A stretch of 62,914 bases of DNA, filler included, from Reticulomyxa filosa (Eukaryota > Protista > Foraminifera): NCBI GenBank assembly GCA_000512085.1. It is 26 parts of 26 records of this genome, joined end to end, with 100 filler letters (N's around TTAATTAATTAA, not from the genome) between each part and the next. Parts side by side here need not be neighbours in the genome. Positions count along the whole stretch, not along the records: positions 39,874 to 44,378 come from ASPP01008046.1; 25 more parts are not named here. One strand, given 5' to 3'. This document shows positions 41,099 to 41,814 of the stretch, in pieces (position 1 is the first letter of the stretch; each line of letters starts with the position of its first letter). Position numbers and translations under genes: made by a program. The notes below the pieces were generated by a model. That model worked only from the letters and a program-made list of their open reading frames with translations, was not told the origin of the DNA and ran no database searches.

Positions 41099-41154
41099 GC
41101 CCTTCAAATCAAACAAGAAATAGATTATTGATCCAATACTTGTCATCATATGGC
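41099..41154 (-). promoter_or_regulatory. SECIS element candidate in the selenoprotein 3' UTR
   Basis: A-UGAU / UGAU non-Watson-Crick quartet (41149-41145 / 41111-41108) closing helix GACAAGUAUUGGAU : AUCUAUUUCUUGUU with loop CAAUA; weak lower helix GCC:GGC. Confidence 0.65.
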
Positions 41155-41296
41155 TAGTGCCATTTCTTTTTTAATTATATTGCTTTTTTGTTTTGTTTTT
41201 GTTAAAACTTTTTTGATTTCCCCCCTTTTTTTTTTGCAAAGAAAACTCAATTGTGACTCCACGTGTTCAGCTCAAAAAAAAAAGTTTTGAAATGTT

Positions 41297-41814
41297 TTAC
41301 AAGTCTTGCTTTGATCCTGTTTTATCTTTAGCAGGGGTTTGTACGAACTGGCGACCAATAAACAGTTGCACTATCTCATCTCTTTGCAGTGGTGACAGAT
41401 CGATAACTGTCTCTTCTTCTTCATGTAGTGTTACCATCGGAGGTTTCCCAGGGTCAAACTGTATGAACAACTCTGGAAACATCTTACAAGGCCCTGATGT
41501 TCTTCCTTCCTTGCCACAATCCTCCCTCACGAATCGCCTTGCGTGTGGAAGGTGATTCAGTTTTCAGCCACTGCAGGTTCGCAGCGTTGCTCTGCGACTG
41601 TATACAATGGTTTCTTCGACTCCCTGGCCTTCTCCCAGGACCGGTCCAAGCGCTTGGGCCAGCCAAACTATACCTAATAAACGAAGCATGGTCAAATACC
41701 AGAAAAAAAACTAAAGGGGGTGTCACAACAGCACTTTTGAAAATTTGTTTGATTAAAAACGTGAACACAACAAATAGCGAGTAAAAAAATGTAATGGTGT
41801 CTTAATTCTGACAT
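41297..41814 (-). CDS. SELENOM: Selenoprotein M / Sep15 family ER oxidoreductase; exon 1 41814 to ~41772 or 41769, exon 2 41673-41297; Sec codon TGA at 41566-41564
   Basis: Signal peptide MSELRHHYIFLLAIC(C)IVWLAQALG; RATLRTCSG-U-KLNHLPHARRFV...FDPGKPP...IDLSPLQRDEIVQLF aligns with SelM ARVETCGGUQLNRLKEVKAFV..PGADP..IPLSEMTREEINAL; C-terminal KQDL. Confidence 0.88.

What the first reader, a model, noticed from the sequence alone, without database searches (positions are those of the whole stretch)
41099..41814. Hidden spliced selenoprotein M-like gene: CSGU redox motif, in-frame UGA, ER-retention tail and SECIS
Seen: the ORF track shows only the 77 aa after the UGA. Reading through TGA (41566-41564) and splicing a short first exon gives signal peptide + RATLRTCSG-U-KLNHLPHARRFV...KQDL*. 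A SECIS-like hairpin sits ~150 nt past the stop. Known: SelM/Sep15 proteins are ER thioredoxin-fold proteins with CxxU/CxU motifs that need a 3' UTR SECIS. Inference: this organism decodes Sec, and standard gene callers would truncate the gene. There is also an extra Cys pair in an insertion (DCGKEGRTSGPC) that I do not recall from animal SelM.
Basis: partly seen in the sequence, partly recalled or inferred. Interest (0 to 1): 0.8.

Follow-up and report, generated by a model that had tools for sequence, protein, structure and literature searches.

The report
Unannotated selenoprotein M-like gene
This is a real, single-exon gene for a selenoprotein M-like redox protein of the secretory pathway, probably from a Reticulomyxa-like foraminifer; gene callers cut it at its selenocysteine UGA, and its 3' UTR recoding hairpin keeps the usual core but lacks the usual upper-part motif.

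Summary
The core observation holds. On the minus strand, ATG 41689 to TAA 41297 is one frame interrupted only by TGA 41566-41564, inside T-C-S-G-[TGA]-K-L-N.

- **Conserved TGA.** Nine related contigs from soil and marine samples, seven distinct genes, keep this TGA at the same place. Substitutions are mostly synonymous on both sides (pN/pS about 0.3).
- **Sec/Cys pair.** Two homologues have Cys there (CSGC). One is Reticulomyxa filosa ETO26440.1.
- **Family.** Pfam Sep15_SelM is just under cut-off for the post-TGA piece (23.8 vs 26 bits) and above it for four relatives. An AlphaFold model of the Cys paralogue has mouse SelM 2A2P as its only significant PDB match.
- **Other features.** The signal peptide, the extra Cys pair and an xx[D/E]L tail are conserved.
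- **Not supported.** The spliced first exon is not needed. The conserved start is ATG 41689, with an in-frame stop 8 codons upstream and short leaders in the orthologous contigs.
- **SECIS.** The hairpin at 41155-41097 (AUGA 41149-41146, GA 41110-41109) is conserved in the orthologues. It is the only significant hit of a model built from them and is absent after the Cys paralogue. It is atypical: it has no conserved AAR/CC motif, its lower helix 2 is short, and no Rfam SECIS model matches it.
- **Untested.** Expression and the Sec machinery could not be tested.

The parts
41567..41689 (-). CDS part 1: Met1 to Gly41. Signal-peptide-like MLRLLGIVWLAQALGPVLG (41689-41633), then ...YSRRATLRTCSG.
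   Evidence: Aligns to residues 1-46 of the R. filosa Cys paralogue P0005. Conserved in orthologues.
41564..41566 (-). In-frame TGA read as selenocysteine; fourth position of the C-S-G-U redox motif (41575-41564).
   Evidence: Same TGA in L001-L006 and L008-L011. Aligns with Cys47 of P0005 and with the Cys of P0006.
41300..41563 (-). CDS part 2: 88 codons, KLNHLPHARRFV...KQDL. Holds the rest of the Sep15/SelM domain, the Cys pair and the tail.
   Evidence: Pfam PF08806 E 4.7e-5, profile 10-70/75. ESM Atlas nearest clusters are Sep15_SelM. 50% identity to P0005 48-133.
41486..41518 (-). Clade-specific loop CGKEGRTSGPC bounded by two conserved cysteines, between helix alpha1 and strand beta2.
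   Evidence: Both Cys are invariant in all Sec and Cys forms found, with variable spacing. The loop is modelled at pLDDT 86-92 in P0005.
41297..41311 (-). C-terminal KQDL (41311-41300) plus TAA stop (41299-41297): a KDEL-like ER retrieval tail.
   Evidence: Orthologue tails are EEEL, TDEL, KTEL, KSEL and KPEL, despite very different tail lengths.
41097..41155 (-). SECIS-like kink-turn hairpin. AUGA 41149-41146; lower helix GACAAG/CUUGUU; 3x3 internal loop; upper helix UGGAU/AUCUA; loop CAAUA; GA 41110-41109; weak helix 1 GCC/GGC.
   Evidence: Model R1 built from L001/L002 hits only here in the piece (26.7 bits, E 1.4e-5). The same architecture occurs in L001, L006, L003, L005 and L008.
41016..41063 (-). 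Second conserved 3'-UTR hairpin: 16-nt arms, 16-nt loop containing CCUUGCCA. Function unknown.
   Evidence: Present with different stems but a similar loop in L001, L006, L003 and L005. A possible counterpart follows the Cys paralogue in L007.

Best explanation
A single-exon gene on the minus strand (ATG 41689 to TAA 41297) encodes a protein of about 130 residues in the Sep15/SelM thioredoxin-like family, SelM type. It has an N-terminal signal peptide and a CSGU redox centre whose U is encoded by UGA 41566-41564. A clade-specific loop is closed by two conserved cysteines, probably a structural disulfide. The tail is KDEL-like (KQDL). The protein probably acts as an ER-lumenal thiol-disulfide oxidoreductase using a selenenylsulfide between Cys39 and Sec42. 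UGA is recoded by a 3'-UTR kink-turn hairpin at 41155-41097, 147 nt after the stop, that serves as the SECIS. That hairpin is a lineage-specific form without the AAR/CC apical motif. The nearest named relative is from Reticulomyxa filosa, so the source is probably that foraminifer or a close relative. Shown: the frame, the conserved TGA, the Sec/Cys pairing, family and fold, and conservation of the hairpin. Inferred: actual Sec insertion, ER location, the disulfide, SECIS function and the host organism.
For: - **Frame:** one frame with one internal TGA.
- **Conserved TGA:** the same TGA sits in R[RK]ATLR[TS]CSG-TGA-KLN in L001-L006. It also sits in TCSG-TGA-[KL]LN in the more distant L008, L009 and L010/L011.
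- **Selection:** pN/pS is 0.26-0.54 upstream and 0.27-0.68 downstream of the TGA. In the last 12 codons before it, pS is 0.2-1.1 against pN 0.06-0.19.
- **Sec/Cys pair:** the N piece aligns to P0005 1-46 and the C piece to P0005 48-133. The TGA therefore corresponds to Cys47 of the CSGC motif. P0006 also has CSGC.
- **Family:** Pfam Sep15_SelM gives E 4.7e-5 for the window C piece and 2.7e-7 for the L001 piece. It is above cut-off for P0005, P0007, P0008 and P0010 at 29.3-42.7 bits. ESM Atlas neighbours are Sep15_SelM clusters.
- **Fold:** the AlphaFold2 model of P0005 has mean pLDDT 79.9 and the order b1-a1-b2-b3-b4-a2, with CSGC between b1 and a1. Foldseek against the PDB gives mouse SelM 2a2p as the top and only hit at E <= 1e-3 (5e-5); Sep15 2a4h is also listed.
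- **UGA is a stop in the relative:** the R. filosa paralogue gene ends in TGA. The 269-codon neighbouring ORF has no in-frame TGA.
- **SECIS:** the core fits the published UGAN/KGAW consensus (PMC3753652). Model R1 gives E 1.4e-5, the only significant hit in the piece. Lower-helix pairs change on both sides in L008, and the upper-helix sequences differ in every clade yet still pair. R1 finds no counterpart after the Cys paralogue in L007 (best 9.3 bits, elsewhere).
- **Clade:** the window groups with R. filosa and the soil sequences at 100/99 support.
Against: - The transcript ends, the unedited TGA and the 3'-UTR extent are therefore unverified.
- The window's own C piece is 2.2 bits under the Pfam cut-off.
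- Sequence-only PDB searches were not significant (E 0.22-1).
- No Rfam SECIS family matches the window or any orthologue at E <= 10.
- No canonical ATGA-N(9-13)-AA/CC pattern exists in any of the UTRs.
- Helix 1 in the window is only 3 bp, and the MFE fold uses a competing local hairpin.
- The Sec machinery could not be looked for.
- The signal peptide and ER retrieval signal are judged by eye and by conservation only.
Confidence: 0.85

Rival explanations
1. The gene is a selenoprotein, but the hairpin at 41155-41097 is not its SECIS. The true SECIS lies elsewhere in the transcript, and this hairpin is another conserved 3'-UTR regulatory element.
For: No Rfam SECIS match. No conserved AAR/CC motif, and helix 2 is shorter than the 14-15 bp described for human SECIS elements (PMC2761289). 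The window's helix 1 is weak. Other conserved 3'-UTR blocks exist: hairpin 2 at 41063-41016 and a block at 40959-40901.
Against: It is the only element with a conserved UGAN/KGAW core at a comparable position in all soil-clade orthologues and in the marine L008. No canonical SECIS pattern exists anywhere in 340-640 nt downstream of any orthologue. Hairpin 2 has no UGA/GA core and may persist after the Cys paralogue, whereas model R1 finds no SECIS-like hairpin there.
Confidence: 0.2
2. UGA is not read as selenocysteine here. It is read as Cys or Trp through a variant genetic code or near-cognate read-through.
For: The aligned residue in the paralogues is Cys. No Sec machinery or labelling data are available.
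Against: There is exactly one TGA per gene, always at the redox position, paired with a conserved kink-turn hairpin in the 3' UTR. The R. filosa paralogue terminates on TGA, and the 269-codon neighbouring ORF has no in-frame TGA. Sec use is documented in another rhizarian, Bigelowiella natans, with 23 selenoprotein genes (PMC7539508).
Confidence: 0.04
3. One reading: a short first exon starting at ATG 41814 is spliced onto the body of the gene and supplies the signal peptide.
For: ORF 41692..41814 (-) begins with a hydrophobic stretch. A TTTAG acceptor-like site lies upstream of ATG 41689.
Against: ATG 41689 opens a conserved MLRxL signal-peptide-like start shared by all orthologues. L004 and L005 have only 32 and 17 nt before their ATG, with in-frame stops 2-3 codons upstream. 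The window has an in-frame TAG 8 codons upstream. The R. filosa paralogue starts at the equivalent Met.
Confidence: 0.04
4. It is a dead gene: a nonsense mutation in a former Cys-SelM, with the two ORFs no longer expressed as one protein.
For: Gene callers see only fragments.
Against: The same TGA is kept in seven distinct genes, with purifying selection on both sides.
Confidence: 0.01

Closest known systems
Selenoprotein M (SELENOM; mouse SelM, PDB 2A2P)
   Same: CxxU motif between strand b1 and helix a1 of a small thioredoxin-like domain. N-terminal signal peptide, short mature N-terminus and a C-terminal KDEL-like tail. It is the best and only significant PDB fold match of the clade's model, and the Pfam family is PF08806.
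   Different: The motif is CSGU, whereas mammalian SelM has CGGU (from memory). An inserted loop closed by two conserved Cys follows helix a1 and interrupts the Pfam alignment. Identity to mouse SelM is about 20%. The 3'-UTR hairpin conserves neither AA nor the CC reported for human SelM (PMC2761289).
Sep15 / SELENOF (Drosophila Sep15, PDB 2A4H)
   Same: Same Pfam domain and fold family. It is also listed in the fold search (rank 18, E 0.12).
   Different: From memory, Sep15 has a CxU motif and an N-terminal Cys-rich UGGT-binding domain and no retrieval tail. Here the motif is CxxU, only about 20 residues separate the signal peptide from the motif, and a retrieval-like tail is present.
Reticulomyxa filosa hypothetical protein RFI_10697 (ETO26440.1, P0005)
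   Same: Closest named relative, 50% identical over the domain. It has the same signal-peptide start, the same TCSG context, the same Cys-pair loop and the same clade.
   Different: It has Cys (CSGC) where the window has UGA, and it ends KEEI rather than xx[D/E]L. Its 3' UTR lacks the kink-turn hairpin; only a possible remnant without AUGA/GA is left.
Eukaryotic SECIS element (type 2)
   Same: Located in the 3' UTR. It has a UGAN/KGAW kink-turn core and a stem / internal loop / stem / small apical loop layout. Helix 1 closes the internal loop in the orthologues.
   Different: There is no conserved AAR or CC motif. The loop in the position where type 2 SECIS carries the AAR bulge reads UAU, UCUUUU, UCUU, AUA, GA or AUUG in the six species. 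The lower part of helix 2 is only 5-7 bp above the quartet. It is not detected by Rfam SECIS models.
Algal SELENOM genes (e.g. in Aureococcus and Emiliania)
   Same: Sec-containing SelM homologues are already known to be widespread in protists, and Sec use is known in Rhizaria through Bigelowiella natans (PMC7539508).
   Different: I found no paper describing selenoproteins of Foraminifera or of Reticulomyxa in the searchable library.

Membership tests
Sep15/SelM redox domain (Pfam PF08806) | Profile HMM match at or above the gathering score | tested here: inconclusive
   The window's post-TGA piece scores 23.8 bits, E 4.7e-5, against a cut-off of 26, covering profile positions 10-70/75. Positions 1-9 lie upstream of the TGA and could not be joined. 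The pre-TGA piece alone gives nothing.
Sep15/SelM redox domain (Pfam PF08806) | Close homologues are bona fide members | tested here: met
   P0005 scores 29.3 bits, P0007 36.9, P0008 29.1 and P0010 42.7, all above 26. In P0005 the match spans the CSGC motif (residues 43-63, profile 5-25). The window is 50% identical to P0005 on both sides of the TGA.
Sep15/SelM redox domain (Pfam PF08806) | CxxU or CxU redox motif between strand b1 and helix a1 | tested here: met
   C-S-G-TGA lies at 41575-41564. The equivalent CSGC of P0005 (residues 44-47) lies between b1 (39-43) and a1 (53-62) in the model.
Sep15/SelM redox domain (Pfam PF08806) | Thioredoxin-like b1-a1-b2-b3-b4-a2 fold resembling solved SelM/Sep15 structures | tested here: met
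   Tested on the natural full-length Cys paralogue P0005, with the window's two pieces as alignment rows. Mean pLDDT 79.9. Foldseek top hit is 2a2p SelM at E 5e-5, TM 0.50; 2a4h Sep15 is also listed. The window's own read-through protein was not folded.
SelM subtype (as opposed to Sep15) | Signal peptide, no Cys-rich UGGT-binding domain, C-terminal ER retrieval-like tail | tested here: inconclusive
   The hydrophobic N-terminus MLRLLGIVWLAQALGPVLG is conserved, but no signal-peptide predictor was available. Only about 20 residues separate it from the motif. The tails KQDL, EEEL, TDEL, KTEL, KSEL and KPEL are conserved as xx[D/E]L, but several fall outside the strict PROSITE KDEL pattern (from memory). 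Localisation was not tested.
Selenoprotein (Sec-encoding gene) | In-frame UGA conserved in orthologues and aligned with Cys in homologues, with coding constraint on both sides | tested here: met
   TGA conserved; Cys in P0005 and P0006; pN/pS about 0.3 on both sides.
Selenoprotein (Sec-encoding gene) | Genome encodes tRNA-Sec, SBP2, eEFSec, PSTK, SepSecS and SPS2 | not testable with these tools
   Only 4.5 kb of the genome is available and it holds no tRNA. The literature search found nothing for Reticulomyxa.
Selenoprotein (Sec-encoding gene) | Sec actually inserted (75Se labelling or MS), with the TGA present in the mRNA | not testable with these tools
Eukaryotic SECIS element | Kink-turn core UGAN / KGAW in a 3'-UTR stem-loop | tested here: met
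   AUGAU at 41149-41145 and UGAU around 41110-41109, 147 nt after the stop. The consensus is quoted from PMC3753652. The core is conserved in L001, L006, L003 and L008; L005 has CUGA.
Eukaryotic SECIS element | Conserved unpaired AAR (or CC) in the apical loop or bulge | tested here: not met
   The window's apical loop CAAUA has an AA, but about 18 pairs above the base. The orthologues have U-rich or other loops at both positions. No ATGA-N(9-13)-AA/CC candidate exists in any UTR.
Eukaryotic SECIS element | Helix 2 of about 14-15 bp setting the distance from AUGA to AAR (PMC2761289) | tested here: not met
   There are 5-7 Watson-Crick or GU pairs above the quartet, then an internal loop, then a second helix of 4-8 bp.
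Eukaryotic SECIS element | Helix 1 closing the internal loop | tested here: inconclusive
   It is 4-6 bp in L001, L006, L003 and L008. In the window it is only GCC/GGC, and it is not part of the MFE fold.
Eukaryotic SECIS element | Match to the Rfam SECIS covariance models | tested here: not met
   No SECIS family appears at E <= 10 in the window or in eight orthologous contigs.
Eukaryotic SECIS element | Present with Sec forms and absent from Cys forms of the same gene | tested here: met
   Model R1 scores 26.7 bits in the window, 59.7 in L006, and a best of 9.3 bits at an unrelated place in the Cys-paralogue contig L007. This rests on one Cys paralogue only.

The most novel reading that the evidence does not exclude
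Reticulomyxa-like foraminifers and their marine relatives decode Sec with a SECIS that keeps only the kink-turn core. It has no AAR/CC motif and a shortened lower helix 2. That would mean their SBP2/eEFSec system does not need the apical determinant that is essential in mammals. A second conserved 3'-UTR hairpin with a CCUUGCCA loop might contribute, but its possible persistence after the Cys paralogue argues against a Sec-specific role.
Probability: 0.55. Interest if true: 0.55.

Novelty: new member of a known kind. Interest (0 to 1): 0.4.

Why it matters
- **Annotation.** This is a clear case of a real gene that standard annotation splits at the Sec codon. The neighbouring R. filosa paralogue is annotated only because it carries Cys.
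- **Phylogenetic reach.** It gives sequence-level evidence that a foraminifer-like rhizarian clade uses selenocysteine. I found no published description of this in the searchable library.
- **A new SelM subfamily.** It defines a subfamily with a CSGU motif and a Cys-bounded loop, found in soil, freshwater and marine protists.
- **SECIS recognition.** The most useful point for specialists is the set of six homologous 3'-UTR kink-turn hairpins lacking the AAR/CC motif. They form a natural test set for which parts of the SECIS are really required, and they explain why Rfam-type models would miss selenoproteins in this lineage.
- **Limits.** Apart from this, the finding belongs to a well-known family and mechanism.

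Tried and rejected
- **Expression:** Expression, an unedited TGA and the poly(A) site remain untested.
- **Metagenome scan:** the scan with the protein alignment matched 70 patterns but found no relative. The soil contigs came through the look-up of encoding contigs instead.
- **Rfam:** no SECIS family matched at E <= 10 on the piece, on the 141-nt hairpin region, or on eight orthologous contigs. The weak miRNA and leader hits are AT-rich noise.
- **PDB sequence searches:** searches with 2- and 5-sequence profiles were not significant; SelM 2a2p scored E 1 and 0.22.
- **SECIS alignment:** MAFFT misaligned the 3' halves of L003 and L005. Model R1 also aligned them to a wrong, shorter 3' arm. 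Cross-clade helix comparisons therefore rest on constrained single-sequence folds, not on the count of structure pairs.
- **Distant loci:** no convincing hairpin was found downstream of L009, L010/L011 or L012. These are genomic contigs with introns and unknown 3' ends.
- **Literature:** searches for Reticulomyxa or Foraminifera selenoproteins, the tRNA-Sec survey supplements and KQDL returned nothing useful.
- The two pieces were searched apart by reference, and the natural Cys paralogue P0005 served as the full-length proxy for folding.
- **Rejected readings:** pseudogene, variant genetic code and the spliced first exon (see rival explanations).
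Full report
**What is in the sequence.** On the minus strand, ATG 41689-41687 opens a frame that runs to TAA 41299-41297. Its only internal stop is TGA 41566-41564. The product reads MLRLLGIVWLAQALGPVLG...YSRRATLRTCSG-[TGA]-KLNHLPHARRFVREDCGKEGRTSGPCKMFPELFIQFDPGKPP...KQDL. The mechanical ORF list shows only the two fragments: 43 aa ending at the TGA, and 77 aa from a GTG after it. An in-frame TAG lies 8 codons upstream of the ATG.

**A rule I followed.** The tools here take no protein read through a stop. 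I therefore searched the two pieces apart by reference (window:41567-41689:- and window:41300-41563:-). I never submitted the joined protein to any search or fold. For full-length questions I used a natural Cys-containing paralogue.

**Family.**
- The post-TGA piece matches Pfam Sep15_SelM (PF08806) at E 4.7e-5 and 23.8 bits, just under the 26-bit cut-off. It covers profile positions 10-70 of 75. The missing first positions are those that lie before the TGA.
- The ESM Atlas feature search puts the piece next to Sep15_SelM clusters.
- The word-based search found four relatives. The exhaustive HMMER search found six more.
- Four of these relatives pass the Pfam cut-off at 29.3-42.7 bits.

**Orthologues keep the TGA.**
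- I fetched the contigs encoding these relatives.
- Six soil-sample contigs, L001-L006, represent four distinct genes. All read M(M)LRxLS...R[RK]ATLR[TS]CSG-TGA-KLN[KR]LP... in one frame.
- L008 (marine), L009 (a Logan run of unknown origin) and L010/L011 (TARA ocean), which are more distant, read ...TCSG-TGA-[KL]LN....
- Substitutions are mainly synonymous on both sides of the TGA. pN/pS is 0.26-0.54 upstream and 0.27-0.68 downstream. In the 12 codons just before the TGA, pS is 0.2-1.1 while pN is 0.06-0.19.
- This excludes a pseudogene and a sequencing error.

**Sec/Cys pair.**
- Two homologues carry Cys at this position, giving TCSGC.
- One of them is Reticulomyxa filosa ETO26440.1, on contig ASPP01007869.1.
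- The window's N piece aligns to residues 1-46 of that protein and the C piece to residues 48-133. The TGA therefore corresponds exactly to Cys47.
- The R. filosa gene ends on TGA, and the neighbouring 269-codon ORF in the window has no in-frame TGA. UGA is thus an ordinary stop in the nearest named relative, and a general reassignment in this lineage is unlikely.

**Fold.**
- I modelled the R. filosa paralogue (residues 1-135) with AlphaFold2, using the clade alignment that includes the window's two pieces as separate rows.
- Mean pLDDT is 79.9. The order of elements is b1-a1-b2-b3-b4-a2, with CSGC between b1 and a1.
- Against the PDB, its best match, and the only one at E <= 0.001, is mouse SelM 2A2P (E 5e-5). 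Sep15 2A4H appears lower in the list.
- The CxxU spacing, the short mature N-terminus and the retrieval-like tail make this the SelM type rather than Sep15.

- The Cys pair in CGKEGRTSGPC (41518-41486) is invariant in every member found. This includes the marine members, where the spacing between the two Cys varies.
- The pair sits in a confidently modelled loop between a1 and b2. It interrupts the Pfam alignment. A structural disulfide is the simplest reading, but that is inferred.
- The tails of the Sec forms are KQDL, EEEL, TDEL, KTEL, KSEL and KPEL. The preceding tail varies from about 10 to about 65 residues. A terminal xx[D/E]L is therefore under selection, as expected of a KDEL-receptor signal. 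Localisation was not tested.

**The spliced first exon is not supported.**
- Every orthologue and the R. filosa paralogue start at the equivalent Met.
- L004 and L005 have only 32 and 17 nt before it, with in-frame stops 2-3 codons upstream.
- The CDS is collinear with these contigs apart from small in-frame indels (about 3-10 codons), so it is a single exon.
- An intron in the 5' UTR cannot be excluded.

**The SECIS candidate.**
- The hairpin has AUGA at 41149-41146 and GA at 41110-41109, 147 nt after the stop. Both sides fit the published core consensus UGAN/KGAW (PMC3753652).
- Equivalent hairpins lie in the 3' UTRs of L001/L002, L006, L003/L004, L005 (with CUGA) and the marine L008.
- All share one layout: helix 1, internal loop, quartet, a 5-7 bp lower helix, a small internal loop, a 4-8 bp upper helix, and an apical loop of 3-10 nt.
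- The lower helix changes on both sides between the soil clade (GACAAG or AACAAG paired with CUUGUU) and L008 (GAGAG paired with CUCUU). The upper helix has a different sequence in each clade but still pairs.
- A covariance model built only from L001/L002 finds the window's element at 41155-41097 with 26.7 bits, E 1.4e-5. It is the only significant hit in the piece.
- The same model finds nothing after the Cys paralogue. There, only a possible remnant remains, without the AUGA A and without the GA. That reading is suggestive only.

**How the hairpin departs from the canon.**
- Human SECIS elements have a helix 2 of 14-15 bp that sets the distance to an essential AAA/G motif, or CC in SelM, SelO and Trxr3 (PMC2761289).
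- Here the loop that occupies the position of the type 2 AAR bulge reads UAU, UCUUUU, UCUU, AUA, GA or AUUG in the six species.
- The window's apical CAAUA is about 18 pairs above the base, and its AA is not conserved.
- My simplified canonical pattern scan found no candidate in any of the UTRs.
- No Rfam SECIS model matched the window or any orthologue at E <= 10. I had no positive control for those models.
- The window's helix 1 is only GCC/GGC.
- I therefore file the element as SECIS-like, with the core features met and the apical features not met. I put its being the functional SECIS at about 0.7. Lineage-specific SECIS forms are acknowledged in the literature (PMC3753652).

**Organism.**
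- A small tree puts the window with the R. filosa protein and the soil sequences in one clade at 100/99 support, apart from the marine ones.
- GC content is 0.35 for both the piece and the R. filosa contig.
- The piece has the size of an R. filosa contig.
- The source is probably R. filosa or a close relative. This is an inference.
- Sec use in Rhizaria is published for Bigelowiella natans (PMC7539508). I found nothing published for Foraminifera.

**What could not be done.**
- The Sec machinery could not be searched, because only 4.5 kb of the genome is available. The piece holds no tRNA.

**Verdict.** This is a real, unannotated SelM-type selenoprotein gene and a new member of a known family. 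Interest is moderate: the family and mechanism are well known, and the AAR-less hairpin set is the part worth following up.

Noticed in passing
window 41016-41063 (-): A second conserved 3'-UTR hairpin about 35 nt downstream of the SECIS-like element. It has 16-nt arms (94% complementary) and a 16-nt loop containing CCUUGCCA. L001, L006, L003 and L005 have a hairpin at the same relative place, with quite different stem sequences but a similar loop ((C)CUUGCCA or CUGCCA). It has no UGA/GA core. A possible counterpart (A/T-only arms, loop CCUCUUGCUAG) follows the Cys paralogue at L007 2230-2278. Function unknown.
   Followed up: partly
window 40901-40959 (-): A third block conserved between the window and L001/L002/L006 (up to 22 of 30 identical), GTGTTG.TTCTTAA.G.TTTT.TGCTTTT. 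It lies either late in the SelM 3' UTR or upstream of the next gene.
   Followed up: no
window 39889-40698 (-): The next gene on the same strand starts at ATG 40698. It has a long acidic, low-complexity N-terminus followed by the start of a Vps41-type beta-propeller (Pfam PF23411, E 7e-9, above cut-off). A GT intron appears to begin at about 39933, and the gene is cut by the piece's edge.
   Followed up: partly
window 43393-44281 (-): Three consecutive minus-strand ORFs (64, 110 and 99 aa) look like exons of one gene separated by short AT-rich introns. None has a significant Pfam match. Not identified.
   Followed up: partly
L007 2195-2230: Downstream of the R. filosa Cys paralogue, the stretch ACATGCGAAGTC...GACTTGTTTTTTTT resembles the SECIS arms of the Sec genes (ATGATAACAAGTC...GTCTTGTTTGATTT). 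It lacks the A of AUGA and the 3' GA. It may be a fossil SECIS left after a Sec-to-Cys change, but the alignment is short and could be chance.
   Followed up: partly
L001 1-55 and 497-551: The first 55 nt of contig L001 are the exact reverse complement of part of its own 3' UTR. This is most likely an assembly or cDNA hairpin artefact, so the L001 'leader' should not be used as a 5' UTR.
   Followed up: no
L003 / L004 / L005, C-terminal region of the protein: One soil sub-clade carries an extra, poorly conserved hydrophilic C-terminal extension of about 55 residues that still ends in K[TS]EL. L003 ends in a run of 18 A, which may be a poly(A) tail about 400 nt after the stop.
   Followed up: no
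window 39874-39924 and 43643-43704: TA-rich low-complexity stretches give weak, non-significant mir-297-like Rfam hits (E 0.1-0.75, far below gathering). This is noise.
   Followed up: no
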